A stretch of 64,000 bases of DNA from Squalus acanthias. Taxonomy: Eukaryota. Shown here piece after piece: positions 1-25,943 of this stretch. The stretch covers positions 7,688,001-7,752,000 of the forward strand of contig CM059452.1 of assembly GCA_030390025.1 (NCBI GenBank). Direction: 5' to 3'. The number at the start of each line of letters is the position of its first letter. Position 1 is the first letter of the stretch. Made by a program: the position numbers and the translations under genes. A model generated the notes under the pieces. The model ran no database searches, was not told the DNA's origin, and saw only the letters and a list, made by a program, of their open reading frames with translations.

Positions 1-1977
1 ACCCACTGTACCTCCCACTTCCCCACCAGAGAGAGGGGAAAGGGCAATTGTTAACCCACTGTACCTCCCACTCCCCCACCAGAGAGAGGGGAGAGGGCAA
101 TTGTTAACCCACTGTACCCCCACTCCCCCACCAGAGAGAGGGGAAAGGACAATTGTTAACCCACTGTACCTCCCACTCCCCCACCAGAGAGAGGGGAAAG
201 GGCAATTGTTAACCCACTGTACCTCCCACTCCCCCACCAGAGAGAGGGGAAAGGGCAATTGTTAACCCATTGTACCCCCCACTCCCCCACCAGAGAGAGG
301 GGAAAGGGCAATTGTTAACCCACTGTACCCCCCACTCCCCCACCAGAGAGAGGGGAAAGGACAATTGTTAACCCACTGTACCTCACACTCCCCCACCAGA
401 GAGAGGGGAAAGGACAATTGTTAACCCACTGTACCTCCCACTCCCCCACCAGAGAGAGGGGAAAGGGCAATTGTTAACCCACTGTACCCCCCACTCCCCC
501 ACCAGAGAGAGGGGAAAGGGCAATTGTTAACACACTGTACCCCCCACTCCCCCACCAGAGAGAGGGGAAAGGGCAATTGTTAACACACTGTACCCCCCAC
601 TCCCCCACCAGAGAGAGGGGAAAGGGCAATTGTTAACCCACTGTACCTTCCACTCCCCCACCAGAGAGAGGGGAAAGGGCAATTGTTAACCCACTGTACC
701 CCCACTCCCCCACCAGAGAGAGGGGAAAGGGCATTTTTTAACCCACTGTACTCCCACTCTCCACCAGAGAGAGGGGAAAGGGCAATTGTTAACCCACTGT
801 ACCTCCACCCCCCACCAGAGAGAGGGGAAAAGGGCAATTGTTAAACCACTGTACCCCCACTCCCCCACCAGAGAGAGGGGAAAGGGCAATTGTTAACCCA
901 CTGTACCCCCACTCCCCCACCAGAGAGAGGGGAAAGGGCAATTGTTAACCCACTGTACCCCCACTCCCCCACCAGAGAGAGGGGAAAGGGCAATTGTTAA
1001 CCCACTGTACCCCCACTCCCCCACCAGAGAGAGGGGAATGGGCAATTGTCAACCCACTGTACCCCCACTGACCCACCAGAGAGAGGGGAAAGGGCAATTG
1101 TTAACCAACTGTACCTCCCACTCCCCCACCAGAGAGAGGGGAAAGGGCAATTGTTAACCCACTGTACCTCCCACTCCCCCACCAGAGAGAGGGGAAAGGG
1201 CAATTGTTAACCCACTGTACCCCCCACTCCCCCACCAGAGAGAGGGGAAAGGGCAATTGTTAACCCACTGTACCTTCCACTCCCCCACCAGAGAGAGGGG
1301 AAAGGGCAATTGTTAACCCACTGTACCCCCACTCCCCCACCAGAGAGAGGGGAAAGGGAATTTGTTAACCCACTGTACCCCCACTCTCCACCAGAGAGAG
1401 GGGAAAGGGCAATTGTTAACCCACTGTACCTCCACCCCCCACCAGAGAGAGGGGAAAAGGGCAATTGTTAAACCACTGTACCCCCACTCCCCCACCAGAG
1501 AGAGGGGAACGGGCAATTGTTAACCCACTGTACCTCACACTCCCCCACCAGAGAGAGGGTAAAGGGTAATTGTTAACCCACTGTACCTCCCACTCCCCCA
1601 CCAGAGAGAGGGGAAAGGGCAATTGTTAACCCACAGTACCTCCACCCCCCGCCAGAGAGAGGGGAAAGGGTTATTGTTAACCCACTGTACCTCCACCCCC
1701 CACCAGAGAGAGGGGAATGGGCAATTGTTAACCCTGTACTCCTACTCCCCCACCAGAGAGAGGGGAAAAGGGCAATTGTTAACCCACTGTATCCCCACAC
1801 CCCCACCAGAGAGAGGGGAAAGGGCAATTGTTAACCCACTGTACCTCCCACTCCCCCACCAGAGAGAGGGGAAAGGGCAATTGTTAACCCACTCTGCCCC
1901 CACTCCCCCACCAGAGAGAGGGGAAAGGGCAATTGTTAACCCACTGTACCTCCCACTCCCCCACCAGAGAGAGGGGA
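1..1977. repeat. 53-bp minisatellite (~37 copies; continues off the window start)
   Basis: Unit ACCCACTGTACCTCCCACTCCCCCACCAGAGAGAGGGGAAAGGGCAATTGTTA repeated with small variants; explains the repetitive ORFs at 580-1987. Confidence 0.97.
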
Positions 1978-3010: not shown

Positions 3011-3651
3011 GCGCGAAAAAACCTCAGGCTATAGAGGAATGTAGAATTAAAATGCACTTTTTGAACGAACACAGTTTCCAACGATTGTTCTGAATGAATA
3101 ATTCTTGATACTATAACATCTCACATTTCTCTATTCTGGTCCTACACATACACTGAATCACTGTTCTTGTTGGAAACTGATACAAGTTAATTATATTCAG
3201 AGCATTGCCGTAACAAATAAATAAACAAGATTATAACTCACATCTGATCTCTTACCTAGCCCCCTTGACAGTCTCCAAATAAGTATCTATCTAACCCTAT
3301 CGTTAAAATAATCGATATCAATCAGTAAACCTCCCTCGATATTTCATCCTATTATTCCCGAATGATAGATTGTACGAAATTGATGCAAAATCAATTAGCG
3401 TGAGACATTGAAGAAAAAACTGTCGTTTTTTTCCAACACGGACAAAAGGAGGATCATAAAGAAAGAGCGACTGTGGAGTTAGGAACAGAGATAGATTGCT
3501 GAGAGTGATTAACTTAACACAAGATATACATTGAAAATTAAATTAGAGAACAAACTAATACCTTAAGGAAAAGAAAAGAATATATAATAGTAATATGATA
3601 TCTTAGATTAATAAAGGATCTGAATATATTTCCTCCTCTACATCCCCGTAG

Positions 3652-3779
3652 ATTCCTCAGACCACATCTTGATTGAAGACTATGAGGAAGAGAGCGGCAA
3701 CATCTGGACAACCGCTTCCACATTCATCATCCTGTTCTTCCTGAGCATGTCCTACAGCGCTGTCGTCACTCTAGTGAAG
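3652..3779 (+). CDS. Immunoglobulin heavy-chain transmembrane exon TM1 (IgM-like; IgW/IgNAR not excluded)
   Basis: Acceptor tttcctcctctacatccccgtag, phase-1 start, translates (D)SSDHILIEDYEEESGNIWTTASTFIILFFLSMSYSAVVTLVK, donor AAG|gtgaga. Acidic spacer + NIWTTASTFIILF..S..YS...TL.K is the conserved IgH membrane (CART) motif. Confidence 0.93.
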
Positions 3780-4246
3780 GTGAGAAGATTCAATCCACTC
3801 ACACTTCGATCTCACTGAAGCGGTTTGACAAATCTCTAAAAGTTTCATTGATTAAAACCCTGAGATAAATGCCCCAAACCACTAAATCTCTGCTTCATTC
3901 TTTTATCCCTCTGAACGGTTGAATTTCGGACGCCGTGGATTTTCCTCATCTGTTTATTAACATCTCTGTGTCCTGAAAATAAAATATGTCCTCTGGGGAA
4001 TTCTCAGAGTCAAATGCCTTCAGTTAATAGATCCGAATCTATAGCTGAGAAAATCATAACCGGGATTTCCGTCTCTCTGTTTGAAATGTGTGAGATAATC
4101 GTGGCTGTAATGGAAATGTTTCTTAGAGTTTCACCGTTGTTTGAATATTTCATGTGTAAATAAGTCACTTTTCTCATTCGTAATTGACAATTGTTCCCTT
4201 CCCTTTATGCTGAGCCCCTGTTTTCTCTCCCTGGTGTCTGTTACAG

Positions 4247-4376
4247 TTGTACAGATAACTGGCAGCTCAGACCGCCTGTGTTCAGGTCTCAATGTGACGC
4301 TCTGTTGTTATATTCACTTTGTGTTAACTTTTTAAAAACTTCTCTGTAAATTGTTCTCTGTAAAATTGTTAATAAA
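4247..4376 (+). other. Candidate terminal TM2 exon/3' UTR of the IgH membrane transcript
   Basis: Strong acceptor cccctgttttctctccctggtgtctgttacag (ends 4246), then TTG TAC AGA TAA (LYR*), AATAAA at 4371-4376. The tail differs from the usual VK*. Confidence 0.45.
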
Positions 4377-7300
4377 TCTGGAATGACAAATGGACTACTT
4401 GGACTTTGCTGAATTCCTTCCGCCAAGGCCCCTCCACACCGCTCCATTTTCCCAATCACACTTTGCTTTATTTCCCTGACAGTATTTTTCACCCGTCCTG
4501 TCTGGGTTGTGTTTGAACCCAAGTCCCTTCGGATAAGCAGCTACTGCGCCACCCAGTGTTCCATCAGAGTAACGACACCTTTACCCCTGCCTTTTCATGT
4601 CAAGACCCAGAGGCGGAATGACTGCACAACGACCAGGCTCACCTCGCAGTCTCTTCCAATATTATGCTCTGTCACAGTCACATGCCAGGTTCTATTAACA
4701 AGCAGTGCTGTATGCTCTGCTCCATCACAGCCTGATAGAGAACAACACATGGCAGAGTAAAACTCCCTTTGAACTGTCCCATCAAACACTCCCAGGGCAG
4801 GTACAGCACGGGTTAGATACAGCAAAGCTCCCTCTACACTGTCCCATCAAACATTCCCAAGGCAGGTACAACACGGGCTAGATATCTGACACAGACTCAC
4901 CAGGGAGCACAAACCCTGGGGATGATTCCCAGAACCTGGGGCTTATCTGACGCACCGCCTCTTTCCTCCTGTTCTGTTATACACACACGTTCTCCAGCTT
5001 TTAGACAGTATTTGAGGGAGAGGAGATGAGGGATCTCACGATGTCCATAGACACATTTGGAGACTTCTGCGCCCGGTGGGTACAATTAGATAAAGGTTGT
5101 GATACAATCCAATTCTAATGGAATATAAAGTTTTAGATTTGTTCAGGCCAGGTGTGCGAGTGGAGCCCTCCTCTCGGGTGGGCACCAGTGGGATGTATTT
5201 TTTGTTTTGGATTAGCCGCTTTAAAGGAGACCCGAGTTCAAATGGTTCACACAGGCCAAGGAGAAAGTAGGTCCTGCACTGGGGTAACCACTTCCAAGCC
5301 TTTTCCAATCTCAGCTACACCCATTAACACTGACCCTCTGTCTCCTGTTTTCCTGACAACATTTCTCCCTGCTCTGCTCCATTCCCTCTTATAACATCAC
5401 CCTGAACTCACTGAACATCACCAAGGATCAGCAGTAACCTTCAGACCTTTGCTCCCTGTTTCCTTGAACTTTCTCTCCACATCCTTCACCGTCTCATCAG
5501 ATTAGTTCGGTGACTCCGTGCCACCTGAACATCTCCAGAGGTTTCTGGCCAGGCCCGAGTATCTTCCAGCATTTTCCTTCTAATGTGGTTTTGTTTTTCC
5601 TAGAAACTCCAGCAATTCAGGCGTGAGGTCTCCTGTAGTTGAATATGACATCGGGTTAAGAGAGGGAAGAAGGGAGATTGGGAATGTATGGAGTTGGTGT
5701 TTAAACTCAGTCTCTACTACAATCTCTCACCACTCCCCCTATCCGGGGCCGCCATCTCCTCTTATATCACCCTCGTCTCTCTGCCCTGTTCCCAGGCTCT
5801 CACTGACTCCGGGCTCGGTGATTCTCATGGACTGCAGGGCCCGTTTAAGAGGCTCCGTGCTGCCTCACCCCCCCACCCCCCACCCACAATCCGGGTCAGA
5901 GGACTGAGTCACGGGTCACAGGGGCAGCAAACTGGGGCTATTTAGCTCTGAGCGGAAGCTGGAGACGGCCGGTGATCTCCTGACCCTGAATCAATGGGGG
6001 AAACAGCCAATAAAGTTGCTGTGACGTGCTGATGGATTGTGGCGTCATCAACTGCAGGGCAATGTTGGTGTGACGATCGTGGACCATGTTTGTGTGACAT
6101 ACAATCGGCCATGTTGATGTGACCATCATGGACCATGTTGGTTTGACGAGCAGTCGGCCGTGTTGGTGTGACGTCCAGTCGACCATATTGGTGTGACGTT
6201 GAAACGCTGCGCATGTCTGCTGTTTATTTAAGTAAAACGGCTCGATTGAAAATAAAATGTATTTCATTTTCCATCAAAATAACCGTTTGATCTTAATCGA
6301 TAAAATTGAAAGTTTGGCGCGCGAGAGAACAAAAACGTTGCCATTAAAGCGGTTGGTGAGCTGCGCATGTGTGGACAGTTCTCCCAGAGTGCAGCACGGC
6401 CTGTGTCACAATGGGCCTGTTCACTGCCGCTATGAATTGTGGGAGCCGTAGCCCTCCATGGCCGAGTCATTAACTCACTGAATCCAAACCCATCCTCCTT
6501 CAGCCGAGAGCTGGCCGGGTTGTTGGTCCGGACAGACTGCGGGTGCTGTGCTGAGCGGAGAGAATCTCTGAGCAGATTGGACACCGAATCCGTGAAATCC
6601 CAGGAGGTGGAGACCACTCATCAGCCCAATCGGTGTAAGACGGATTGAACCAAAGAAAAGGAAAGAAGAAACTCTACTGGTCCTTGTGGAAACAGGCGGA
6701 CAATAAATATAACCCCTAGTGTGAAATATGACTCGGCAAAAGATTCATTTATATGGTGAAAAAAACAATTCTTTCCATTGAATGAGGGGAAAATGTGGAA
6801 TATCTGCAGGAATTATTTTAACAGGGTAATTGGATAGGGGGCTAGAAAGAGATAACTATTAAATTGTGTGAAGAGCGGGAAGGAAAGTGCAGACTTGATG
6901 GGCTTATCACTTGTTTCTGTGCGTTAAAATTCTAAGATGAATTGAGAATACATCCGTGCAGAATATTTGTACACCTTCTCTCCCTGTGCTCTGTATCACT
7001 GTGTGTCTGTAATCCCCACCATGTTCAAGTATTTGTAGCAGGGGAACGAAGCGGTGGGGGGGAGGGGGGGCGCGGGGGAGAGGGAATCAAAGGGGTAGTC
7101 TTGGGGAGCGCTCGAATTTGGTTCTAATTACCGATGGCGCAACGAGTGGGCGGGATTTACGGGCCAGGGGTGGCGATGGACCCGAACACTTGCAGAGGAT
7201 AATGATATTGGGAGGCGAAAATTTTGACTGCCATCCTTGGTTGAATGCTGGACATCCGTGCGTTTACCCCAAATACTGTCCCTCTGTAACTAGGGCTCGA

Positions 7301-7619
7301 AAGAACAAGAGAATAATGAATCAAAGCGGACCTTCGGCGGTGCTGTTTTTCCAACCTTACTATCTCATGCAGCCATAATTGGCACCTAACAGGAGTTTGT
7401 AATCCCAGTCAGATCGCAATGTCAGAGAAGAGAGGGGATCGAAGCGGGGAGAAGAGAGGGGATCTGGGGAGAGGAGAGAGGGGATCGGGGGGAGAGGAGA
7501 GAGGGGATCGAGGGGAGAGGAGCGCGGAGAGGGAGGGGCTCGGAGGGGGGAGAAGGTCAGAAACTCGGGGAGAAAAGGTCTGGAACTTGCATAACATTAT
7601 ATTTATGTGTTATATGCCG

Positions 7620-7910
7620 GACTCAATTATTCCAATGTTCTCCTGGGCAGTCTCCCATATTCCACCCGCAATGAACTTGAACTCATCCAAAACTCTGCTG
7701 CTTGTATCCTAACACGGAGCAAGTCCCATTCACCCAGCGCCCCTGTGCGGCCACGCAGCTGTCTGGAGGTCCGGCACAGCCCGTTAAAGGGACCGCATAC
7801 ACCCCCCACCCCCCTCAAAAATAATTAGGTGGAATATTGTCCACCAACACTTTGATTTTAAAATTCTCATCCTCATGTTGAAATCCCTGCATGGCCTCAC
7901 TCCTTCCTAT
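7620..7910 (+). mobile_element. L2-type LINE 3' fragment (interrupted)
   Basis: Reads LNYSNVLLGSLP...LELIQNSAACILTR; same family at 17640-17980 and 44920-45250. Confidence 0.65.
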
Positions 7911-8669
7911 CTAAGTCGGCAGTGTGAGTTCTCCTAACCCGGGAGGGTGAGTCCTGTCTGTTCTCTGAAACCAGTAATGTTGGCCCTGTGAGCTCTGTAG
8001 CCTGGCTGTCAATGAATGGATCAAATTATACATTGCAAAGATCTTGATTACTCAGGCAGGCGGGATCTAATTACACATTCCAGACAAACTGCTGGGCGTG
8101 TCTTGTCCTCCAAAGGGCCCAATCAGAAATCTGGTCTTGTCCTCCAAGGGGACCAATCAGAACATTGGTGTTACAAATAGTTACAGCCTAATTTTAATCA
8201 CCTCCATCAGGTCTCCTCGTTTTCTTCTCTTTTCCAAACAAAAGACCCCCGCCTGTTCTATCTTTCCAGAAATGTGTGGATTGCTGCTGCTGTCTTTTCT
8301 CAGGAGTGCAAGAAATCCAAAGCTGAGAAAAGGGCCGGTGTCCAATCGCAGCCGTCCCTCCAGTAAATCTCACTGCCCCGGTGTCGGATTGTGCTTTGAA
8401 CGGCCCAGAGACCGGTGTCTCCACACCCCCGCCCGGCCGGTGAAGTCCGATATTTCTCTCCCTTTCGGTGAATGATTTCTTGCTGGTTCTAAATGGGCTT
8501 CCCTCCAGTCTGTACTTGTTCCCTCGGGTGTTCCTGCTCTCCTTTATAGGAACATTAGAACCTCGCCCTCACTCGCTCACTGCCCAGTGTTGTTTCAGTT
8601 AACAGTAACCAGGGATACAGATAAATTACTGCAATCCGATCTCTCAAACATGAACATTAAATATTACAC

Positions 8670-8940
8670 AGCATCACACAGAATGTAGAGCACAGAAACA
8701 GGCCATTGGGCCCAATCGGTCCATGCCGGTGTTACTGCTCCACACGAGCCTCCTCCCACCCCTACTCCATCTCACCCCATCAACAGATCCTTCTATTCCT
8801 TTCTCCTCACCTACTTATCTAGATTCCCCTTCAATGTATCGATGTTATTCGGCTCAACTGCTCCTTGTGGCAGCGAGTTCCACATTCTGACCACTCTCTG
8901 GGGAAAGAAGATCCTCCTGAATTCACTATTGGATTGATTA
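8670..8940 (-). mobile_element. CR1-type LINE 3' fragment
   Basis: 3' UTR-like and RT C-terminal remnants resembling the CR1 copies elsewhere in the window. Confidence 0.6.
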
Positions 8941-9179
8941 GGAAATATCGAACAATATAAATAATATAGAAAAGTATCTGTAGTTCGAAGCTTTTACATT
9001 TCGACTTAAACGAGAGACATGGAGGCAAAATGATTGTTTATAGAAAAGCAATTGGAATAAATGTCAGATACTATACAAATAATTTCAGTCACTGAGTGTC
9101 CAATAATTAAATGCCATCTAGACCTACAGGCGGATCTCTTGTATCTGGAGCCCCGCCGTGTTGTGCTCCAGTATTTCTG

Positions 9180-9480
9180 CCGCTGTAGGTATCGGACGGG
9201 CCGCTGCAGGTATCGGACTGGGCCGCTGCAGGTATCGGACGGGCCGCTGCCGGTATCGGACGGGCCGCTGCAGGTATCGGACGGGCCGCTGCAGGTATCG
9301 GACGGGCCGCTGCAGGTATCGGACGGGCCGCTGCAGGTATCGGACGGGCCGCTGCAGGTATCGGACGGGCCGCTGCAGGTATCGGACGGGCCGCTGCAGG
9401 TATCGGACGGGCCGCTGCAGGTATCGGACGGGCCGCTGCAGGTATCGGACGGGCCGCTGCGGGTATCGGACGGGCCGCTG
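9180..9480. repeat. 21-bp CpG-rich minisatellite (~14 near-identical copies)
   Basis: Unit GGGCCGCTGCAGGTATCGGAC; ~500 bp 3' of the NAR-type J. Confidence 0.97.
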
Positions 9481-9976
9481 TATTGGGTTCACTCTCCCGG
9501 TACCTCATTCACACTGCCTGGCTCGGACTGCAATCTCCTGCCCAGGACGGAGCTCTGTGACCCCCTGCCCTGCTCACAGGGACAGGCAGAGCTCCCTCAG
9601 TCACAGTTAACACCGAGAGCGGAGGCGGAGTGTCGACAATCTGCGCTCATTTAAACGAACTGGGGATCAGAGTGATAGTCCTGTATATTCATGGGACCCC
9701 CGAGGTCCCCGTTAAACCAATGATGTCCATGGGGTCAAACCGCCCAGACTGCCTGCTCCGTGGGGGTCTCAAACCTCCTCTCTCCGGACTCACACCCGGA
9801 CCCGATCCCGGTTCATATTCTGCTCCCCAATCTAAAACTGCAATGAACCCCCCACCCTTAGAAAACCGCTCAGTTTTACTTTGAAGGGGATTGAGGTGAT
9901 ACTGATCACAAGTATAAACTGACGATAAACATTAACTGGGACAGTCTGTAACACGGCGGGGTTTGGAGTCACTTAC

Positions 9977-10034
9977 CGGCTGTGACAGTCACCACCGTCC
10001 CGGATCCATCCACATATTCAGTCCGTTCACCCAC
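9977..10034 (-). CDS. NAR-type J segment
   Basis: Translates VGERTEYVDGSGTVVTVTA + phase-1 G, donor gtaagt (9971-9976). DGSGTVVTV resembles the IgNAR J motif rather than FGxG/WGxG. 5' RSS: heptamer 10035-10041, 23-bp spacer, nonamer ACAAGAACC 10065-10073. Confidence 0.93.
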
Positions 10035-10417
10035 CACAGTGACACCGCTCTCAGTCACCCCGGTACAAGAACCACCGACACCTCAATCTGCCGGACACAC
10101 ATCACCAGACAGTCGGCGCTGCCCAATTATTCCAGGGATCAATAAACAATATTCCGTGTTCCACAGTCCCCGTCGGTTCAAACTGTTCTTTGTGAGACTC
10201 TGAGCTCTCAGTAAAATGGCCCAGGAACACGGGCCGGAGATGGGCGCTTCATAGAAACAGAGAAAATAGCAAAGAAAGATAACTGAAAGCAGGAAATTAC
10301 AATGAAATTAAACCAAATTACAGCGATAATAAGATCAAACCTACAATTCAGGTTCCGGGCCCGGGGAATTTATATTTTAATTGTACACAGGTATTTGCTC
10401 AGGTCTCATCCACTGTG

Positions 10418-10432
10418 AGGTTCCCCAATTAA
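10418..10432 (-). CDS. D segment (15 nt, TTAATTGGGGAACCT) flanked by 12/12 RSS
   Basis: Consensus heptamers at 10411-10417 and 10433-10439, each with a 12-bp spacer and a nonamer-like sequence (GCAAATACC 10390-10398; ATCAAATCC 10452-10460). Confidence 0.9.
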
Positions 10433-10820
10433 CACAGTGTTTCAAGTCAGCATCAAATCCCCCGGGACTCGGTGAGATGGGGGACATTAGTTACACGGCG
10501 GGGACCGCGGTTCCCGGTTCCAGCTGTTAGAACAGGATCCCATCTGGTGTTCGGGACTTGTAACTGGGATCAGTCATTCCCAATCGCCATTCATTGACAC
10601 CAATCCCGGGAAAGACGTCACCGCCCGCACACACTCAGCATTTACAAAACTCAAGGTGTTAACTGCAATAATCCAATCTGATTATAAACTAGACTGTGGG
10701 GCAGACGGTGCGAGGCGGAACTGTGGGTTTAACGGCAGATTAACTCCGCTCTTTCATTGTTTCTGTGAGAATCTGCAGCGAGAGTTTTTGTATCGTGGGA
10801 AGCCGAGGCCCATCACTGTG

Positions 10821-11298
10821 TGGTGTACCAGTACTCAGCTTTACAGTAATAGGTGGCGCTGTCTTCAACTCGCACATCCCGAATTTCCAGCGAAAATGTC
10901 TTTTCTGCCGTATTCGTCCTCACAACAAATCGCTCTCCGCTCGAAATCCGCTCCCACTCTGACCCGGTCTCGGTTTGTCTGAAGAAATGTCCATTTAGAA
11001 AATCATAATCCCAATAACCACCAGAGAAAACACAGGTGATGGTGAGAGACTGACACTCCTCCCTGGTCACCGCTAGCGGGGTCTGTGTCACTGACTGACT
11101 GAAAGAGCCTGGAAATTAAACAGAGAGAGTTTAATGGACCATCAGAGCCGAACCACACAACGGGGCTAAAACCCAGACAATGTCCGCAATTCGGATGGAC
11201 CCGGGCAGCTTTATATTAAATCCACACAATGTCGGTTTGTTTGATCGGTACTCACGGGGTAAACAGACACACAGGGTGAAAACAAGGAGGATTCCCAT
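10821..11298 (-). CDS. NAR-TCR-like (IgNAR-type) V gene: leader 11256-11298, V exon 10821-11108
   Basis: Spliced product MGILLVFTLCVCLPRSFS-QSVTQTPLAVTREECQSLTITCVFSGGYWDYDFLNGHFFRQTETGSEWERISSGERFVVRTNTAEKTFSLEIRDVRVEDSATYYCKAEYWYT: VNAR-like short FR2/absent CDR2, YYCKA end, extra FR1 Cys. RSS CACAGTG (10814-10820), 22-bp spacer, ACAAAAACT (10783-10791). Confidence 0.92.
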
Positions 11299-14548: not shown

Positions 14549-15027
14549 GGGCTCATGGCACAGAAATACACGGCGGTGTCGGAGATCAGGGCTTTGCCAA
14601 TCGTTAGCTCGGTAATCTTCGTGTTTCATTAAACGTAGAATTAAATCGATCAGTGAAGTAGGGTTCCTGTTTACTATCCCTGCAATAATATAAAGCACGT
14701 ACTGTGGAGGCTTCCCGGGGTACTGACTGTACCATCACACATCAGGGCTTTTGTTGCTTGTTTTCACGGTGCAGGTTAGTGTGACATTACTTTCCTCTTC
14801 AACCATCATTTCAGGACCGGCTGTTCCACTGTGTCTTGGTGGCTCCATTCTAACATAAAATTACAGTAATAGTCATCATCATCACCTCAATCAACATAAT
14901 CATCATCATTTGAACAATAATAACATCTTAGTCACAGCAGTCAGGGGGAGGATGGATTTTTACTGGGAAGGAAATACTTACTGAGAAGTGATATAACGAT
15001 GAGGAGCGGTTCGAGACGGTTCCGCAT
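14549..15027 (-). pseudogene. TCR alpha/delta V pseudogene (WSHQDTVEQP family); leader 14982-15027, V exon 14549-14849
   Basis: Leader MRNRLEPLLIVISLL; V has frameshifts and a TGA before WYSQ; ends DTAVYFCAMS; RSS CACACTG-24bp-ACAAAAACC (14509-14548). Confidence 0.88.
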
Positions 15028-15353
15028 GATGCTCCGAGTCTGTAACTCTGCAGTCCGGGAAATCCTCTGTCGGAGCAGAAATACAGATCCCCGCCCCCAC
15101 TGCACTGCTGATCCAACCAATGCCAAACAGGGAACAGCGGCAGCTGTGGGCGGGGCTACCGCGGGCGGTGTTGCCACACGTAGGATCCACCTGTGAGGAA
15201 CTGAATTCAATAATAATGTCTCCATCGTAAATTATATAACTCTACCTCCCTATAAGGGCTGCGTTACTTCCACATACATTACAAATTCGGGGCAAGCTGT
15301 CTCGTGACAGGAATTGTAGTATTATTATATTATTCGATGTTACCGAAAACTTC

Positions 15354-15910
15354 ATCTGTTGGCCATTGCTCGGCGGAACCTCCAGAACTCAGTCCTGCAG
15401 AAAACATTCCTGGTTACCCAGGAAACAGNNNNNNNNNNNNNNNNNNNNNNNNNNNNNNNNNNNNNNNNNNNNNNNNNNNNNNNNNNNNNNNNNNNNNNNN
15501 NNNNNNNNNNNNNNNNNNNNNNNNNNNNNNNNNNNNNNNNNNNNNNNNNNNNNNNNNNNNNNNNNNNNNNNNNNNNNNNNNNNNNNNNNNNNNNAGATAA
15601 AACTATATGATCTTACTACTATCTGTGTATACCTGGAAATAAAGAGACAGAAAAAGAAAGCATTAGAACAATGGCTGGACATAGATACACAGGTACAGAG
15701 ACAGAACGAGATATAGCTATGCAGAGAGATAACAATACAGACAGACAGATAGAAAGCTGCACAGATAGATGGATAGACCTTGAGATCGATGAATGGAAGA
15801 CAGTTGTGTCAATAGTGGAATGGACAGACAGACAGACAGATGTATAAATAAATAAACCAACCGAATAACAACGTTGGAAGGCCCCAAATAACGAAAACCC
15901 CAAACTCCAT
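15354..15910 (-). pseudogene. Truncated V (paralog of the 59.2 kb gene): leader 15862-15910 plus first ~40 nt of the V exon
   Basis: Leader MEFGVFVIWGLPTLLF; exon starts 15394 GLSSGGSAEQWPT then joins sequence matching the flank at ~59830, so the V body and RSS are deleted. Confidence 0.8.
15429..15594. other. Assembly gap (166 N)
   Basis: Run of N inside the leader-V intron. Confidence 1.
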
Positions 15911-17039
15911 CATGGCCGCAGTCTCCCCGCAATGGGACCCCACACTTCACCCGGTGCCTCCTCTCAGTTGCAGCTTTCGGACTGAAGGGGAGAATTTGAA
16001 ATGTTTCTGTCAGCACACGGAGACCCGTCATTTCCTGAATCAAACCAAGAGCCTGGTTTCAATGAGCTGCCGGTGATCATTGTCGCTGTCTGTGTTCATC
16101 AACCCTGCCCGCGGCCCCGGCACACAGGCTCCGTGAGCTGCACTGCTTTGTCCCGGACATCTGATCATCCGATCCCGGGAATGGGTGAGGATTCTGTCTG
16201 ACCGTTACCGGCCTCACCCACAATACCTGGACACATCCCGGAAATGCTCCTAACGACGAAGAAATCCCTTCGGTTGAAGTCTATTCTTCAAAAGAATTCC
16301 CATTTTAACCGTGTTTTAAACGCGATGCTGACGGTTAATGAGGAATCGATTTTAGTCTTTTCTTGTTGATGAAAAAAGTTCCATTTGTTCGAAATTGAAA
16401 ATCTGACACGATGTTGTCGCAACGTCACTACTTCAGAATTTCCCATTAACCACAGTTTACTCTCGAACATTTTTGTCTGTGCCTTTCTGTGCGTTTATCT
16501 GTCTGTCTCTGTCAATGTGTGTGTCTGTGTTTATCTGTGAGTGTTTGTCTGTGTGTGTTTATCTGTGTCAATGTGTGTGTCTGTGTTTATCTGTGAGTGT
16601 TTGTCTGTGTGTGTTTATCTGTCACCCTGTGTCAATGTGTGTGTCTGTGTTTATCAGCCTCCCTGTGTTGATCTGTGCATGTTTGTCTGTGTGCGTTTAT
16701 CAGTCTGAGTTTCAGTGTTTCAAATGCTCTATGTGAGGGTTGTTGGAACACAGGAGGGCGCTGTCTGATCACTTCTTAAAGATCTTCCGTCTCAAACAAC
16801 TCAGCTGAATATAAATAAAGATCCTCCACAACAGGTCAACCACTTGTGGTTATCTGGTTTACGTTACCTGTGTGCGTGTATATGTTTGGGCGTATGTGTG
16901 TGTGTGTGTGTGTGTGTGCGTGCGTCCCATGGCTGATACTTATTGACAAGGGCGGGTTGCCTTGAACTGGAGGTTTTCTCTCCGGCAGTTTTATTTCGCC
17001 GAGGATTTTAACAGCGACAGATGAGTTTAAAACTCTGTG

Positions 17040-17454
17040 CGGCTCAGCAGACAGAAATACACGGCGGTGTCCTGGATTTCCGCTCCAGTGACCGTTAAGG
17101 GATATTTGTTTCTGTATTGGCTTGGCCGGCATTGAACCTTCCCTTGGTAAAATCCGCCTTATTTTGGCACTCTTATCCCGATACAAAATAAAACACGGAG
17201 CCTGGTCCGTGTGCTGCTGGTACCAGTACAGATCGGGGTTACTGAGCCTTGTTGTGTAGCTACAGTCTATTTTCACACCATTTCCTTCAGTGACACTGAA
17301 ACTGCTTGAATCTCCCCTGAATAAAAGTTAACTGATGGTTGAATACAATACTGAGATAGAAAGCCTATTAGCATCACATTGGTGCAAACAGACACAAGGC
17401 CTGGCCTTACCTACCGAACACCAGGCACAATATAACGAGGTGACGGTACGACAT
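17040..17454 (-). pseudogene. TCR alpha/delta V pseudogene (paralog of 44.3 kb V); leader 17415-17454, V exon 17040-17316
   Basis: Leader MSYRHLVILCLVF; 25-nt FR1 deletion and a later frameshift relative to the 44.3 kb copy; degenerate RSS (CACAGAG, poor nonamer). Confidence 0.88.
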
Positions 17455-17639
17455 GGACTCTATTGTATCTCCACCAACAACCCCTTGGAATAACAGTTCT
17501 ATTTCCCGTTGCAATCTGTTATACTGAGTAAAGTAAGAAACTGTTCTAAAGGAAGGTATAACAGAAGGTGAGGAAGTGTCTCGTGCAATTCTATTCCTGG
17601 TAAAAGGGACCGAATGCATTATTTGGGTGATAGCATTTT

Positions 17640-17980
17640 AACTTCGCCCCTACCGCAGCTCACCTTCTGCTGAAACCATCATCCGTGTCCTTGTTACCTC
17701 TAGACTCGACTATTTCAACGCTCTCCTGGCCGGCTTCCTGCCTTGCACTCTCCGTAAACTTGAGCACATTCAAAGCTCTGATGCCTGTATCCTAACTCCC
17801 TCCAAGTCAAGTTCACCCATCACACCTGTGCTCGCTGACCTACATTAGCTCCCGGTCTGACAACGCCTCCATTTTAAAATCTCATCCTTGTTTTCAAATC
17901 ACTCCAAGGCCTCGCCCCTCCCTATCTCTGTAATCTCCTCCAGCCCCACAACACTCCGAGATATCTGCGCTGCTCCAGTG
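17640..17980 (+). mobile_element. L2-type LINE 3' fragment
   Basis: LDYFNALLAG..L.KLEHIQ remnants; orthologous copy at 44920-45250. Confidence 0.7.
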
Positions 17981-18027
17981 CCTCTGTTGGAAATGAAAGC
18001 AGATTAAATGCGTTTGATCATAATTAC

Positions 18028-18073
18028 CGGCCAGAAATGCTCGTCACACAACCCAGATGCTGAGTAGCCGCAT
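18028..18073 (-). pseudogene. Orphan V leader exon (MRLLSIW family) with stop codon; V exon absent
   Basis: ATGCGGCTACTCAGCATCTGGGTTGTGTGA...G|gtaatt; promoter matches 62190-62420; the intron runs into the L2 fragment. Confidence 0.8.
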
Positions 18074-19203
18074 TGTCGCTGTCCGCTCTGTAAAATGGCG
18101 GGGGGGGGTGGATATTTGAAGACACCCGTTCTAAACCCACCCTCAATAATCTACTGTCGTGTCTCAGGATGCTCTCACCTCACTTCCTGGAGTCCCCAGT
18201 GGTGCTGTGAGACCGGTAGGTGGTGAGCTGGCTGTCAGTGAGTGGAAACACCCCGAGCTGGGCTCCAGTCAGTGACCTGACAGGCGAATTGTTCCGTTTT
18301 TAGAGACCGGGTTGGGAATGAAACTCTTGTCTGGTTATTGTAACCGGAAACTCAGGATTGTAAATGGTGACAGAAAATATTCCGGCACGGAAGAGACAAT
18401 CTGAAGGACAATGGACATTGTGGGAACTCTGTGCTTGGGGCTTGTTTTAAAGAGCACAATCACTACCTTCTGAAAATCTGAAATCTGTTCATTGTGTATA
18501 AAGTTTCTGACCCAGCAACATACTCTGATCAAAGAGTGCAGGCCGCGATCAAAGGGTCCGGGAAACTGACAGGGGAGATGTGTAAAGGACTGCGCAATAT
18601 TACAGACAAGAACGGAAAAGTCTTTCGGATGAGAAGTGAAACTGAAGCCCAGTCTGCCTCCTCAGGTGGATGTAAAATAACCCATGGCACTATTCGAAGA
18701 AGAGCAGGGGACTTATTCCCCGGTGTCCTGGCCAATATTTATCCCTCAACCAGCATCACTAAAGCAGATTTCTTGGTCATTATCTCATTGTTGTTTGTGG
18801 GAGCTTGCTGTGTGCAAATTGACTGCCGCGTGCCCTACATTACAACAGTGACTACACTTCAAAAGTACTTCATTGACTGTAAAGCGCTTTGGGACGTCCG
18901 GTGGTCTTTAATGGTGCTATATAAATGCAAGTCTTTCATTCTTTTGTAAAGTATAAAAGGGGATTTAAGGCTCCACAGATATGATTGGTGAAGGTAATTT
19001 TTATTATAAATGCGAGCTGAAATCACAAACAAATATAATTCCGCAAGTGGACCTCACCTGTTCTTGTTAGGTGTTGTGTTTTGTTGCTTTCACTCTGGAG
19101 GCTCAATTAGTTAATCGGGGTGAGAGCGCCCTCTGGTGAGCACCAACTGGAACTCTCAGTGTGGGTTTTTGTACGGGATCTGCTATATCTCTGCAGCAGT
19201 GTG

Positions 19204-19641
19204 GGCTCCATGGCACAGAAATATACGGCGGTGTCGGAGACAAGAGCCGCGGCGATATTTAACGGAACAGTTTTGTTTTCTTTTTGCAAAACAGCAGAGA
19301 ACCTCTCTGTGAAATCTGGAGACTGATCTCCCGTCCCCGAGCTATATCTACTCAGGAAATAACGTGGAGCTTCCCCGGGATACTGGATGTACCAGAAGAG
19401 AGTTGGCGCTTTGTACGTTATCGAGTAACTACAGTTCAGTATTACGGTCTGTCCTTCCTGAACCGTTAATTCAGGCGGATCCTGGGACACTGAATCTTTC
19501 CCACTCGTTCCTGTAACAAAACACAGAATGTGTCAAAAGTCTGGGAGTGAATATAACCCTTGGAACACACACTGACCCTTTAAACATAGACTCACCGGGC
19601 AGCATCACCACTATTACCAGCAAGGAACATGGAGAGCACAT
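19204..19641 (-). CDS. TCR alpha/delta V segment, intact; leader 19596-19641, V exon 19204-19510
   Basis: MCSPCSLLVIVVMLPGTSG-KDSVSQDPPELTVQEGQTVILNCSYSITYKAPTLFWYIQYPGEAPRYFL...SDTAVYFCAMEP; RSS CACACTG-24bp-ACAAAAACC (19164-19203). Confidence 0.93.
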
Positions 19642-21014
19642 GGTGCCTGGTTTAGAGTTCGACAGAAAATCACCGAAGGTTTTAAATATGTTGATCCTTC
19701 TAGTCTGATATTAAAGAGTAAACACAGATCAGGGGCAGGCTTCACTTATTGGGAAACTGAGGGGCGTTTCGCAGTGACATGATTGGCTGTTCTCTCAGAA
19801 CAGACGACAGTTGGGCACCAATCAGTGTTAGTTTTGGTTGAATTAATTTCTCTGCCTGTTTCTCTTTCTGTCTCGCTGGCTTTCTCTGTCTCTCTGTCTC
19901 TCTCTTTGATTCTGGCGTTTGCCTGTCTGTCTCTCTCTGTCTGCCATTCTCTCTGTCTCTCTCTCTCTCTGTGTGTCGTGTTCCATGAAGGTGCAGCGTG
20001 TAGAAAACCAATTTGTCCCAATCTCTCGTTTCAACACAACAAAATGCTCAATTAATAGTTGCAGTTATAATAGATAATATATGATAACTACAGCTCAGAG
20101 ACATGTTTGAATTGGCAGCAGTTACTTTAAAAATCTCACACTTTATTAGACAGGCGGGAATCATGAGACGAAGCTATACCCACTGTATATGGCGCCGTAA
20201 AGCTATACCCACTGTATGTGGCGCGGTACCTCAGAGTTGGAATCTGTCTGGTTTCATACTGTTTTGAACGAGCTACATTCATCGGTTATGTCTTAGATAT
20301 TAAAAATAAACAAAGGGAATCACCGGGATTTACACTGAAGTTGTCATTAACGCCGTGTATATGTTTACATGCATTAAAGTGTCTAATAATAACAAGAAAA
20401 ATGTGACGTAATCATGCAAAAACAACCACCAGTAATTTGAGAAAGATTCAGCAGAGAGCCGATTCTTCCACCAGAGGGAGCTCACTCGTCGTGTTTGCCT
20501 GTTCACTGCAGCAGATTAAACGCAAGATTACATGGCACTTGCGGATGTGGAACGCCGTTGAACCCATTTTAATTTACCTTCGAGAAAACCCCACCCCCCA
20601 TAATTTCCTTTATTTGTTACTAAACTCATCCCTTGATGTTGGATTCTGACGCTTTGACTGGAGTCCATTCCAAGTGTCGATCGCTCTCTGTGTGAACAAC
20701 ATTCTCTTCATCTCAGTCCTAAAGTTACCATTTACTAGTTTGAACCTGTGCACACTTGTTCTACTGCCACTGTTTAATTTAAGTCATTTTCCGCATTAAC
20801 TCTTTTCCCTATCACGTGCTATCTTATATATTTATGTAATTTGTTTTTGTTCCCTGGAGTTCATAAACATTGCTTCTCTCATGGTCTCTCTCTGTTCCTC
20901 TTATTTACTCTACATCTGTTTCCCTCACTTTCTAAATCTTTTACTCTCACTGTTGTTCTCTGTTTCTCGCACTGCCTCTACGTCTGTTTCTCTCTCTCTC
21001 TCTTTCCTTCTACA

Positions 21015-23050
21015 GAAGAACATAAGAAGTAGGAGCAGGAGTAGGTCATTTGGCCACTCGAGCCTGCTCCGCCATTCGATAAGATCATGGCTGATCTGAT
21101 CTTGGCCTCAACTCCACTTCCCTGCCCGCTCCCCATAACCCTTGACTCCCTTATCGTTCAAGAATCTGTCTATCTCCACCTTAAATATATTCAATGACCC
21201 AGCCTCCACAGCTCTCTGGGGAAGAGAATTCCAAAGATTCACGACCCTCCGAGAGAAGAAATTCCTCCTCATTTCCGATTTAAAAGGGTGCCCCCTTATT
21301 CTGAAATTATGCCCCCTAGTTCTAGATTCCCCCACGAGGTGAAACATTCTCCCTGCATCTACCCTGTCAAGCCCCTTCAGAATCTTATATGTTTCAATAA
21401 GATCCCCTCTCATTCTTCTAAATTCCAATGAGTATAGGCCCAACCTGCTCAACCTTTCTTCATAATATAACCCCTTCATCTCCGGAATCAACCTCTTGAA
21501 CCTTCCCTGAACTGCCACCAATGCAAGTATATCCTTCCTTAACTAAGGAGACCAAAACTGTACGTAGTACTCCAGGTGTGGTCTTACCGCCGCCCTGTAC
21601 AGTTGTAACAGGACTTCCCTAATTGTATACCCCATTCCCTTTGCAATAAAGGCCAACACTCCATTTGCCTTCCTAATTACTTGCTGTACCTTCATGCTAA
21701 CTTTTTGTGATTCATGTACAAGGACCCCCAGATCCCTCTGTACCTCAGCATGTTGTAATATCTCCCCATTTAAATAATAATTTACTTTGTTTTCCCTGCC
21801 AAAGTGGATAACCTCGCATTTTCCCACATTAAACTCCATCTGTCAGATTTTTGCCCACTCACTTAGCCTACCTATATTCCTTTGGAGATTCGTTGCGTCC
21901 TCCACACAATTTGCTTTCCCACGTATCTTTGTAGCATCAGCAAATTTGTCAAATTACACTCCTTCCCTTCATCCAAGTCATTAATATAGATTGTAAATAG
22001 CTGAGGCCCCAGCACAGATCCCTGCGGCACCCCACTAGTTACAGTTTGCCAACCTGAAAATGACCCATTTATCCCTACTCTCTGTTTTCTGTTAGTTAGC
22101 CAGTCCTCTATCCATGCTAATATATTACCCCCAACCCCGTGAGCTCTTATCTTATGTAGTAACCTGTTATGTGGCACCTTATCGAATGCCTTCTGGAAAT
22201 CCAAATACACGACATCTACTGGTTCCCATTTATCCACCCTGCTCGTTACATCCTCAAAGAACACCAGCAAATTTGTCAAACATGATTTCCCTTTAATAAA
22301 ACCATGCTGACTCTGCTTGACTATATTATGATATTCTAAATGTCCTGCTATCACTTCCTTAATGATGGACTCCAGCATTTTTCCCATTGACAGATGTTAG
22401 GCTAACTGGTCGATAGTTACCTGCTTTCTTTCTCCCTCCTTTCTTAAATAGGGGCGTTACATTTGCGGTTTTCCAGCCCGCTGGGACCTCTCCAGAATCC
22501 AGGGAATTTTGATAGATTACAACCAGTGCATCCACTCTCTCGGCAGCCACTTCTTTTAAGACTCTAGGATTCACGCAACCGGTCCAGCGGACTTCTCCAC
22601 CTTTAGTCCCATTAGTTTGCCTATTACTTTCTCTCCAGTGATAGTGATTGTATTAAGTCCCCCCCACCTCATTAACTCCTTGATTATTCATTATTGGGAT
22701 GCTTTTAGTGTCTTCTACCGTGAAAACTGATACAAAATATTTGTTCAAGGTCTCCGCCATTTCCCTGTTTCCCATTATTAATTCCCCAGACTCATCCTCT
22801 AGGGGACCAACGTTTACTTTAGCTACTCTCTTCCTTTTTATATACCTGTAGAAGCTCTTACTGTATGTTTTTATATTTCTTGCGAGCTTACTCTCATAAG
22901 CAATCTTCTCTCTATCATTTTTTTAGTCGTCCTTTGCTGCTTTTTAAACATTTCCCCATCCTCTGGCCTTTCACTATTCTTCACAACATTGTATACTTCT
23001 GTTTTCAATTTGATACCATCCTTTACTTCCTTAGTTACCCACGGAAAGTT
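21015..23050 (-). mobile_element. CR1-clade LINE, 5'-truncated, frameshifted RT
   Basis: ORF pieces [47 protein letters not shown]; CR1-type 3' end. Confidence 0.95.
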
Positions 23051-24208: not shown

Positions 24209-24606
24209 ATGAATGAAATTGTAACTTTCACTTTTTTGATTTTAGGTGAGTGTTTTGTGCAGAAAAGCGTTCACCATTAAAACATATTTCTTGTGTCTAA
24301 TTTTTCATCTCTTTTGTATCGACAGTTATCGGCGGCGAGGCTGTGATCCACCAACCACAGCAAGTGTTTTCACAAGAGGGACAATCGATTCAAATCCAGT
24401 GCAACGCGACCACCAGCGGCACTGATAGTATCTTCTGGTACAGACAACTACAGAATCGTGGCCCGAAATTTTTCATATCTGCTATCCAGGGCAACGCCAC
24501 TGATGGACGATTCAGACTCTTCATTGACCCAACAAGAAGTTATAACATTCTCGGTATGGACAGCACCGCGGTATCAGACGCTGGAGTGTATTACTGTGCA
24601 GTGAGG
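24209..24606 (+). CDS. TCR alpha-type V segment, intact; leader 24209-24245, V exon 24326-24606
   Basis: MNEIVTFTFLILVIGG-EAVIHQPQQVFSQEGQSIQIQCNATTSGTDSIFWYRQLQNRGPKFFISAIQGNATDGRF...DAGVYYCAVR; RSS CACCGTG-23bp-ACAATATCT (24607-24645). Confidence 0.9.
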
Positions 24607-25620: not shown

Positions 25621-25845
25621 TGACGTCATGAATTGGAGAACAAATGATTTATGAGCCGATTGGATCAATTTGAAAACAAAGTCGCTGAGATGATTGGATG
25701 ACTTGGAGAGCAAAGTACCCGTGAGCTGATTGGATTAATTAGAGAAAACAGGATCTGTGACTTGATTGGACGACTTGGAGAACAAAGGATCCGTGAGCTG
25801 ATTGGATACCACCTGCTGACTCTGTCAGGAATAAACCAATCGGCA
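25621..25845 (+). promoter_or_regulatory. V promoter: CRE (TGACGTCA) followed by a tandem array of CCAAT boxes
   Basis: TGACGTCA at 25621; ATTGG at ~25632, 25659, 25693, 25729, 25765, 25801 (~35-bp period); paralogs at 47711-47860 and ~51950-52090. Confidence 0.6.
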
Positions 25846-25943
25846 GAGAGACCGGATATTACTCAGCATCTTCCGAACTCTTGAAAAAGACAATTACAGG
25901 TTCAAACCGTTCTGTTCAAATGCGCCATCAACTCTCTGCAAAC

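What the first reader, a model, noticed from the sequence alone, without database searches (positions are those of the whole stretch)
3652..11298. IgH membrane exon lies tail-to-tail, ~6 kb from a NAR-TCR-type V-D-J at the edge of the TCR alpha/delta V array
Seen: an intact IgH TM1 exon on + (3652-3779; good splice sites, CART motif), a NAR-type V-D-J on - (9977-11298), then ~25 TCR V segments/fragments. Known: sharks use IgH V segments on TCR-delta chains, and IgH-like V material has been found in chondrichthyan TCRA/D loci; an ancestral IgH-TCRD linkage has been proposed. Inference: an IgH constant gene, not only stray VH, abuts the TCRA/D locus here. That would allow Ig/TCR chimeric rearrangement in cis: VH(D) of this cluster to TCR-delta, and by inversion the 22-RSS NAR V or 23-RSS TCR Vs to this cluster's 12-RSS D, giving NAR-V or TCR-V on an Ig constant region.
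Basis: partly seen in the sequence, partly recalled or inferred. Interest (0 to 1): 0.9.

Follow-up and report, generated by a model that had tools for sequence, protein, structure and literature searches.

The report
IgM membrane exon beside NAR-TCR cassette
In a shark chromosome region where antibody and T-cell-receptor genes are interleaved, the tail end of one IgM gene copy lies six kilobases from a NAR-type V-D-J cassette; the layout is real, but this kind of layout is already published and this IgM copy looks partly decayed.

Summary
3652-3779 (+) is an intact IgM-type TM1 exon. 9977-11298 (-) is an intact NAR-type leader-V, one D and one J, with RSS spacers 22 / 12-12 / 23. Beyond it lie 22 TCR alpha/delta-type V segments or fragments.

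- No constant-domain exon lies anywhere in the 64 kb, so whether Cmu exons sit upstream of the window could not be tested.
- The TM block (about 3050-4650) lies far deeper in the DNA runs than its unique flanks, as a multi-copy family would.
- The window's own letter at 3763 (Val37) appeared in none of four runs.
- Where a contig from a run guessed to be RNA starts the TM2 exon (3912), the window has no AG, and probably lacks the two tail codons.
- The NAR cassette has no supporting V within 6.2 kb of its J.

Linkage of IgM, IgW and IgNAR clusters to TCR alpha/delta, with TCR-type Vs between IgH clusters, was published in 2025 (PMC12227049). First-stage notes of this scan, unchecked, describe the same arrangement at many other places on this same piece of DNA. 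So this is probably an internal junction of a mosaic, not the array's edge. Cis chimeric joining is allowed by the RSS spacers but nothing here shows it. Verdict: real, a new member of a known kind, modest interest.

The parts
1..1977 (.). 53-bp minisatellite (37.7 copies, 93% matches). It lies upstream of TM1, in what would be the Cmu4-TM1 intron if a cluster lies upstream.
   Evidence: sequence
3050..4650 (+). Block around the membrane exons that lies far deeper in DNA runs than its unique flanks, as a multi-copy IgM-cluster 3' module would. Its left limit was not determined, because 3050 is where the laid stretch began.
   Evidence: table 2: X2 1005-2966 and X4 946-4117 per bin here, against X2 88-320 and X4 63-599 in the unique bins of 5050-7649. 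Summed contig depth is not a copy number.
3652..3779 (+). IgM-type TM1 exon: phase-1 acceptor (AG at 3650-3651), donor GT at 3780, open frame of 42 codons. It differs from every laid contig at 3763 (window T gives Val37; contigs have C, giving Ala).
3912..4390 (+). Stretch homologous to the TM2 plus 3'UTR exon of transcribed family members. It starts with a stop codon at 3912 and carries AATAAA at 4371-4376. No AG precedes 3912 in this copy, and the two tail codons appear to be missing.
   Evidence: joint 3779->3912, skipped ends GT..TC, six contig letters unplaced; contigs of the runs guessed to be RNA end at 4337 and 4374, with depth 0 in 4450-4649; no Val-Lys-stop exon, AATAAA at 4371.
4650..5050 (.). 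Very high-copy interspersed repeat that bounds the deep block on the right.
   Evidence: table 2 (depth 1e4 to 1e7); (65-bp unit, 1.9 copies, at 4759-4884)
9179..9480 (.). 21-bp tandem repeat (14.3 copies, 97% matches) in the spacer between the two cassettes.
9977..10034 (-). NAR-type J segment ending one base into a codon, followed by donor GTAAGT (GT at 9976-9975).
10035..10073 (-). J RSS: heptamer 10035-10041, 23-bp spacer, nonamer 10065-10073 (7 of 7 and 8 of 9 to consensus).
10390..10460 (-). Single D segment (10418-10432, 15 nt) flanked on both sides by RSS with 12-bp spacers.
   Evidence: sequence
10783..10820 (-). V RSS: CACAGTG, 22-bp spacer, ACAAAAACT.
10821..11108 (-). NAR-type V exon, open frame, Pfam V-set. 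The best solved relatives are all VNAR.
11256..11298 (-). Leader exon (ATG at 11298, donor GTGAG at 11255-11251), in frame with the V exon. A TATA-like ATATAAA lies at 11329-11323.
   Evidence: sequence, read by eye
14560..62876 (.). 22 TCR alpha/delta-type V segments or fragments, 11 on each strand, mostly with 22-24-bp-spacer RSS; several are frameshifted or partial.

Best explanation
This is one junction inside a mosaic antigen-receptor region of an elasmobranch chromosome, where IgM heavy-chain miniclusters, NAR-TCR cassettes and TCR alpha/delta V segments are interleaved. On the + strand lies the 3' membrane module of one IgM minicluster copy: at least 600 bp of the intron before TM1, an intact TM1 exon, the homologue of the TM2/3'UTR exon, and a polyadenylation signal. 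The module appears to belong to a multi-copy family, members of which appear to be transcribed. This copy differs from every laid contig by one Ala-to-Val change. It has no splice acceptor, and probably not the two tail codons, at the spot where a spliced contig starts TM2, so it probably cannot make the standard membrane tail (inferred, about 0.55). Convergent with it, 6.2 kb away, is a structurally intact NAR-type leader-V, single D and J. Its RSS pattern is antibody-like (22 / 12-12 / 23) and its J has a splice donor, but no supporting TCR-delta V follows it. Each part, if it works at all, works in its own receptor system. The arrangement most likely arose by segmental duplication or insertion of Ig clusters within the TCR V field (inferred). 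Whether Cmu exons lie just upstream of the window is not shown; my estimate is about 0.6.
For: TM1 is homologous to mu membrane chains and matches 28-31 of 42 residues in five shark IgM-type models. 6 of 6 shark or chimaera Ig heavy-chain models (five IgM-type shark models and one Callorhinchus Ig-like protein) hit only TM1 with their constant parts. DNA depth is much higher over 3050-4650 than in the unique flanks, in two DNA runs from different samples. Two runs guessed to be RNA cover 3050-4374 but have depth 0 in most unique bins, and one contig joins the TM1 donor to 3912. The NAR cassette anatomy is complete. No V-like sequence lies in 1-10,100: tblastn gave none at E<=1, a protein profile gave best E 2.8 and nhmmer E 8.2. 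The flanking Vs are TCR-type with 22-24-bp spacers. Published maps of four elasmobranchs show IgH clusters linked to TCR alpha/delta with TCR-type Vs between them (PMC12227049). As leads only: scan notes of IgM clusters, some next to NAR-TCR cassettes, at many other places on the same piece.
Against: No Cmu exon was seen, and the upstream DNA could not be read. Summed contig depth is not a copy number, as the tool itself warns. The TM2 inference rests on one contig in one run whose RNA nature is a guess, with six letters whose place is 'not known'. An unspliced contig (3751-3912) matches the window with one difference, so copies like the window exist in that run. Orphan TM cassettes are also noted in this genome (s1-889030, s1-889890), so 'no cluster upstream' is a live option. 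No long piece shows contiguity.
Confidence: 0.6

Rival explanations
1. Orphan membrane cassette: a partial duplicate of an IgM cluster (intron piece, TM1, decayed TM2, polyA signal) left among TCR V genes, with no Cmu exons upstream. It would be a relic without function.
For: No C exon in 64 kb. A 2-kb minisatellite and an AC-rich tract fill most of the 3.65 kb before TM1. TM2 is not canonical. The Val37 letter was not seen in any run. Scan notes of CH-less TM cassettes elsewhere in this genome (s1-889030, s1-889890; unchecked). The only note within about 10 kb upstream is a retroelement.
Against: The deep block includes at least 600 bp of intron before TM1, and the contig there runs 133 letters further left. 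Scan note s1-889863 speaks of IgM clusters flanking a TCR V array 24.5 kb before the window (unchecked). TM1 itself is open and agrees with the laid contigs at 127 of 128 letters.
Confidence: 0.3
2. One reading: a complete, working IgM cluster abuts the NAR-TCR and TCR V genes and takes part in cis Ig/TCR chimeric rearrangement. This would be VH to TCR-delta D-J, and by inversion NAR V or TCR V to the cluster's D, giving these Vs on a mu constant region.
For: The RSS spacers of the NAR V (22) and the TCR Vs (22-24) would pair with a 12-spacer D by the 12/23 rule. IgM/IgW VH to TCR-delta trans-rearrangements in sharks are established, as cited in PMC12227049 (passages read). TM1 is intact.
Against: The cluster's V, D, J and C were not seen. 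TM2 is probably defective. No transcript evidence for this allele. No paper found by searches reports a TCR V or NAR-TCR V on an Ig constant region.
Confidence: 0.1
3. Assembly artefact: the TM block was placed here by a misjoin at the minisatellite or at the high-copy repeat at 4650-5050, and does not really neighbour the NAR cassette.
For: The block looks multi-copy and is bounded by a 2-kb minisatellite and a very high-copy repeat. The window-specific letter at 3763 was not recovered in the DNA runs. No laid piece spans either boundary by more than a few hundred letters.
Against: All 30 bins of 3050-9049 are covered in both DNA runs. The joints listed in DNA runs link repeat copies with sides of only 20-27 letters. 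Contigs drop rare variants, so the missing letter says little. Scan notes describe the same neighbourhood (IgM exons next to NAR-TCR cassettes) elsewhere on this piece (unchecked).
Confidence: 0.07

Closest known systems
Elasmobranch antigen-receptor complex: IgM, IgW and IgNAR clusters linked near TCR alpha/delta (Flajnik et al., Sci Adv 2025, PMC12227049; sections 6 and 15 read)
   Same: IgH cluster material and TCR alpha/delta-type V exons lie on one stretch of DNA. NARTCR Vs are drawn in the same map. The paper uses this proximity to explain Ig/TCR trans-rearrangements.
   Different: The paper works at gene-map scale in four species. Its coordinates are in table S1, which I could not see because supplements are closed. 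It does not describe, in the text I read, membrane-exon cassettes, their state, or NAR cassettes without a supporting V. The species of this window is coded and unknown to me.
NAR-TCR, the doubly rearranging TCR-delta of cartilaginous fish (Criscitiello et al. 2006; not held here; described in PMC3457774, PMC3149040 and PMC6795676, passages read)
   Same: A NAR-type V with its own D and J, lying among TCR V genes, and a J with a splice donor.
   Different: As I recall the 2006 genomic description (not read here), each NAR V-D-J is followed closely by a leaderless supporting TCR-delta V. None is present within 6.2 kb here; an IgM membrane module on the other strand comes next instead.
Shark IgM minicluster, membrane form (Heterodontus 'Ig heavy chain C region, membrane-bound form', P0043; Chiloscyllium and Scyliorhinus models P0003, P0039-P0042)
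   Same: The TM1 exon is homologous along its whole length, the conserved polar residues of the helix are kept, and the exon phase is the same.
   Different: All 10 shark or chimaera sequences end with two residues after TM1 (VK 7, IE 2, VE 1). The window has no such exon behind an AG. The C exons are not in view.
Ig VH use by TCR-delta: trans-rearrangements and TAILV (Criscitiello 2010 and Deiss 2019, known to me only through citations in PMC12227049)
   Same: Physical closeness of Ig and TCR-delta gene segments with compatible RSS.
   Different: Those cases put Ig Vs on a TCR constant region.

Membership tests
IgM heavy-chain membrane exons (TM1-TM2 module) | TM1 peptide homologous to mu-chain transmembrane segments | tested here: met
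   PDB phmmer: 6 of 8 matches are the mu membrane isoform, E 4.4e-7 to 2.1e-5. Library phmmer: 23 hits, with the Heterodontus IgH peptide and shark IgM-type models among the 10 named. 28-31 of 42 residues identical to five shark models.
IgM heavy-chain membrane exons (TM1-TM2 module) | Exon bounded by a phase-1 acceptor and a GT donor | tested here: met
   AG at 3650-3651 after a pyrimidine tract; GTGAGA at 3780. A contig joint starts exactly at 3779.
IgM heavy-chain membrane exons (TM1-TM2 module) | TM2 exon giving two residues and a stop, then 3'UTR and a polyA signal | tested here: not met
   No AG followed by Val-Lys-stop in 3780-7000. The skipped stretch before 3912 ends in TC, not AG, and six contig letters are unplaced. 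AATAAA is present at 4371. The 3'UTR homologue is present.
IgM heavy-chain membrane exons (TM1-TM2 module) | Cmu1-4 exons upstream on the same strand | not testable with these tools
   None in the 3,651 bases before TM1 nor anywhere in the window. Upstream DNA could not be reached.
IgM heavy-chain membrane exons (TM1-TM2 module) | Transcription of this copy | tested here: inconclusive
   Runs guessed to be RNA cover the block, but with C at 3763 in all contigs (the window has T). Contigs drop rare variants.
NAR-TCR | NAR-type single V domain | tested here: met
   The 12 best PDB chains are all VNAR or new antigen receptor V. Pfam V-set E 4.3e-10.
NAR-TCR | Own D and J with RSS, and a J splice donor | tested here: met
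   One D with 12/12 RSS, J with 23 RSS, V with 22 RSS. GTAAGT follows J.
NAR-TCR | Leaderless supporting TCR-delta V close behind the J (feature recalled, source not read here) | tested here: not met
   No V-like sequence in 1-10,100 on either strand. This agrees with scan note s1-890699.
NAR-TCR | Lies within the TCR alpha/delta V field | tested here: met
   22 TCR-type V units at 14.5-62.9 kb. For one of the two Vs tested the best PDB matches are TCR alpha chains. For the other they are mostly antibody light-chain or scFv chains, with TCR alpha chains lower in the list.
NAR-TCR | Expressed as a three-domain TCR-delta chain | not tested
   The single read-laying run covered 3050-9049 only.
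IgNAR cluster (considered and rejected) | Several D segments and IgNAR C exons after J | tested here: not met
   Only one D was found at the thresholds used. The six IgM-type query models found no C-domain match in the window; no IgNAR constant sequence was used as a query.

The most novel reading that the evidence does not exclude
The pairing of an IgM-cluster tail with a NAR V-D-J cassette that has no supporting V is a recurring duplication unit of this chromosome. It would preserve the kind of intermediate through which a NAR V(D)J moved between the TCR-delta locus and an Ig cluster (the origin of IgNAR or NAR-TCR). Such units might still yield, by inversional joining in cis, NAR or TCR Vs on a mu constant region.
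Probability: 0.08. Interest if true: 0.8.

Novelty: new member of a known kind. Interest (0 to 1): 0.3.

Why it matters
At base-pair scale it shows how closely antibody and T-cell-receptor gene pieces sit in a shark: an IgM membrane module 6.2 kb from a NAR-type V-D-J whose RSS pattern is antibody-like. That fits the published view that Ig and TCR-delta share one ancestral complex and exchange parts. If the NAR cassettes beside IgM clusters prove to be a repeated unit, they would be useful for dating the NAR V transfer. They would also help in asking which cassettes are used. On its own this copy adds detail, not a new principle.

Tried and rejected
Looked for CH exons in the window with six shark or chimaera Ig heavy-chain models (five IgM-type shark models, one Callorhinchus Ig-like protein). 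Only TM1 was hit by constant parts.

Looked for a canonical TM2. None was found. The candidate at 4247 (three codons and a stop) lies inside what the contigs show as continuous 3'UTR (3912-4337), so I rejected it as the normal TM2.

Looked for a supporting V or its remains in 1-10,100 by tblastn, a protein profile and a DNA profile. Nothing was found.

Tried to fetch a reference IgM locus and upstream DNA with the look-up of encoding contigs.

Tried to find a gene model of this genome carrying this TM1:
- A region search with P0003 gave 7 shark proteins, none with the window's letters.
- The 42-residue peptide alone gave only the Heterodontus peptide.

The NAR V search gave 8 unnamed V-set proteins, 63-77% identical, which did not help to name it. 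The PDB search did.

All eight look-ups of the scan's findings were used, plus one errored try (error). No note describing a Cmu exon within 24 kb upstream came up. This proves nothing either way.

Papers not held: PMC7039070, PMC1458790, PMC7909615. The genomic layout of NAR-TCR and the RSS layout of shark IgM clusters are therefore recalled, not read. One search (TM1, TM2, CH4, shark) gave nothing useful on shark intron sizes.

The species could not be named because run organisms are coded. IgNAR, IgW and a non-Ig receptor were considered as the source of the TM exon and rejected, because all named close relatives are IgM-type. No IgW or IgNAR membrane sequence was available for direct comparison.

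Full report
**What is there, TM side.** The + strand at 3652-3779 is an exon-like stretch. It has a pyrimidine tract and AG just before it and GTGAGA just after it, and an open frame of 42 codons.
- Against solved structures, 6 of the 8 sequences at E<=10 are the membrane isoform of the mu heavy chain (E 4.4e-7 to 2.1e-5). One is gamma-1 (1.3e-3) and one is an unrelated kinase (0.55).
- Against 1.84 billion representatives, 23 proteins reach E<=0.001.
- I looked up names for 10 of those 23. They include the 43-residue Heterodontus 'immunoglobulin heavy chain' membrane peptide and Chiloscyllium models. One of these (P0003) carries four mu-type constant domains before the same tail. The other 13 were not looked up.
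- Ungapped, the window's TM1 matches 28-31 of 42 residues in five shark IgM-type models.

So the exon is an IgM-type TM1. No IgW or IgNAR membrane sequence was at hand for a direct contrast.

**What is missing on the TM side.**
- All 10 shark or chimaera sequences I could see end with TM1 plus two residues (VK 7, IE 2, VE 1).
- The window has no AG followed by such a two-codon exon anywhere in 3780-7000.
- tblastn of six shark or chimaera Ig heavy-chain models (five IgM-type shark models, one Callorhinchus Ig-like protein) against all 64 kb hit TM1 with 6 of 6 (E 3e-15 to 4.7e-9). Their constant-domain parts hit nothing below E 0.01. The remaining hits below 0.01 were the V domains of two models on the V segments.

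The 3,651 bases before TM1 are a 53-bp minisatellite (1-1977), an AC-rich tract and about 650 bases of unique-looking sequence. Any Cmu exon must therefore lie outside the window.

**Reads.** The look-up of sequencing runs on 3560-4420 listed 22 coded runs, 20 of which hold part of the stretch. I laid four of them on 3050-9049: X1 and X14, guessed to be RNA, and X2 and X4, guessed to be DNA, from different samples. All were Logan contigs.
1. In both DNA runs the bins from 3050 to 4649 are far deeper than the unique bins of 5050-7649. The values are X2 1005-2966 and X4 946-4117, against X2 88-320 and X4 63-599. The single X2 contig over TM1 has depth 1216, against 51-98 for the X2 contigs in unique sequence. 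The tool warns that summed depth is not a copy number. I take it only as a sign that the module belongs to a family of near-identical copies.
2. At 3763 every contig in X1, X2 and X4 reads C (Ala), whereas the window reads T (Val37). X14 has no contig over that place. The window's own letter was seen in 0 of 4 runs. Contigs drop rare variants, so this is no proof of absence.
3. X1 has contigs from 3050 to 4337 and X14 from 3064 to 4374. Both have depth 0 in 4450-4649. X1 has depth 0 in all unique bins beyond, and X14 in most of them. This is what transcripts ending after the AATAAA at 4371 would give.
4. One X1 contig (229 letters, depth 53) lies on 3912-4105 and then jumps to 3779. It has 29 letters on TM1, and six letters are left that the tool does not place. 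The skipped stretch begins GT and ends TC. The window reads a stop codon at 3912, right after a pyrimidine tract without AG.

Six letters is the length of the two tail codons. My reading is that transcribed copies start TM2 just before the homologue of 3912, and that the window lacks that acceptor and those codons.

Against this reading:
- it rests on one contig in one run whose RNA nature is a guess;
- an unspliced X1 contig (3751-3912) fits the window with one difference, so window-like copies are in that run too;
- contigs in both X1 and X14 end at or three letters past 3912, which I can only explain by copies differing at that spot.

No long DNA piece tests contiguity. The listed pieces were 112-347 letters. 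The DNA joints link repeat copies, with 20-27 letters on the short side.

**What is there, NAR side.** On the minus strand lies a leader (ATG at 11298, donor at 11255), an intron, and an open V exon (11108-10821) in frame with the leader. The RSS scan found:
- V: heptamer CACAGTG, 22-bp spacer, nonamer ACAAAAACT;
- one 15-nt D (10432-10418) with 12-bp-spacer RSS on both sides;
- J: RSS with a 23-bp spacer.

J (10034-9977) ends one base into a codon and is followed by GTAAGT.

The V is a V-set domain. The 12 best-scoring solved chains are all named VNAR or new antigen receptor V (E 2.9e-16 to 7.9e-14), ahead of ordinary antibody Vs. One D, no C exons after J and the setting among TCR Vs speak for the NAR-TCR kind, not an IgNAR cluster.

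The supporting V that should follow the J (as I recall the 2006 description, which I could not read) is absent:
- 0 of 33 tblastn places lie in 1-10,387;
- a protein profile of 14 window Vs gives best E 2.8 on 279 open pieces of 1-10,100;
- a DNA profile gives E 8.2.

This agrees with scan note s1-890699.

**The V field.** A strict pattern found 8 uninterrupted V frames. tblastn found 26 places at E<=2e-4 that make 23 units: the NAR V plus 22 TCR-type, 11 on each strand. 15 of the 23 units have an RSS scoring at least 13 of 16, always with a 22-24-bp spacer. For one of two Vs tested, the best solved relatives are TCR alpha chains. For the other they are mostly antibody light-chain or scFv chains, with TCR alpha chains lower in the list.

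**Context.** Flajnik et al. [quoted passage not shown] They also report that TCR alpha/delta-type V exons lie between IgH clusters, and that this closeness explains VH-to-TCR-delta trans-rearrangements and chimeric genes such as NARTCR. Their coordinates are in table S1, which I could not open.

First-stage notes of this scan, unchecked, describe on the same piece of DNA:
- IgM clusters within TCR V arrays at about -1.68, -1.07, -1.0, -0.38, +0.20, +0.38, +0.90, +0.99 and +1.19 Mb;
- a NAR-TCR cassette between IgM constant and membrane exons at +1.26 Mb;
- an IgM relic right after a NAR-TCR cassette at +0.30 Mb;
- CH-less TM cassettes at +2.44 Mb and on another piece;
- a TCR V array 'sandwiched between two IgM clusters' 24.5 kb before this window.

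These notes moved me from 'edge of the locus' to 'internal junction of a mosaic', but I tested none of them.

**How it most likely works.** The TM module is the 3' end of one IgM minicluster copy, or a relic of one. In a working copy TM1 and TM2 would be spliced onto Cmu4 to give the B-cell receptor form. Here the tail exon looks disabled. The NAR cassette has all the parts needed to rearrange, but nothing nearby to splice to.

But the D it needs was not seen. Searches found no report of a TCR or NAR-TCR V on an Ig constant region. Nothing here shows such a product.

**Verdict.** The kind of arrangement is already in print, so this is a new member of a known kind, with two small additions: a probably decayed TM2, and a NAR cassette without a supporting V next to an IgM tail. 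Interest 0.3.

Noticed in passing
window 1-1977: 53-bp minisatellite, 37.7 copies, 93% matches, running to the window's first base. It could sit in the Cmu4-TM1 intron and is a risk spot for assembly.
   Followed up: partly
window 2300-3000: Long AC-rich low-complexity tract (many overlapping periods of 6-52 bp) between the minisatellite and the TM block.
   Followed up: no
window 4650-5050, 6850-7049, 7650-7849, 8050-8249, 8650-9049: Interspersed repeats with contig depth of 1e4 to 1e7 in DNA runs, also present in the runs guessed to be RNA. Most of the spacer between the TM module and the NAR J is repeat.
   Followed up: partly
window 9179-9480: 21-bp tandem repeat, 14.3 copies, 97% matches, open in several frames on both strands (ORFs of 122-197 aa that are probably meaningless).
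   Followed up: no
window 15429-15594: Run of 166 N inside the V field.
   Followed up: no
window 37988-39850 (-): 620-aa ORF with a reverse-transcriptase domain (RVT_1, E 4.2e-33), in a 36-44 kb stretch with strong negative GC skew and no V segments. Probably a LINE-like element.
   Followed up: partly
window 14560-14815, 17051-17312, 50657-50816: V segments whose tblastn match is split over two frames, so they are frameshifted pseudogenes. Further partial Vs lie at 26923, 48911, 52424 and 53513.
   Followed up: partly
window 3560-4420 in public runs: Runs labelled with six other coded organisms (B to G) hold 0.27-0.46 of the sampled words, close to the best holder's 0.57. The TM module is therefore nearly identical under several species labels.
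   Followed up: no
window 11323-11329 (-): TATA-like ATATAAA 25-31 bases before the NAR leader ATG.
   Followed up: no
window 3654-3695: The extracellular spacer of TM1 (first 14 residues) is closest to the old Heterodontus membrane peptide, while the helix shares Met-Ser with a Scyliorhinus torazame model. The species remains unknown to me.
   Followed up: no
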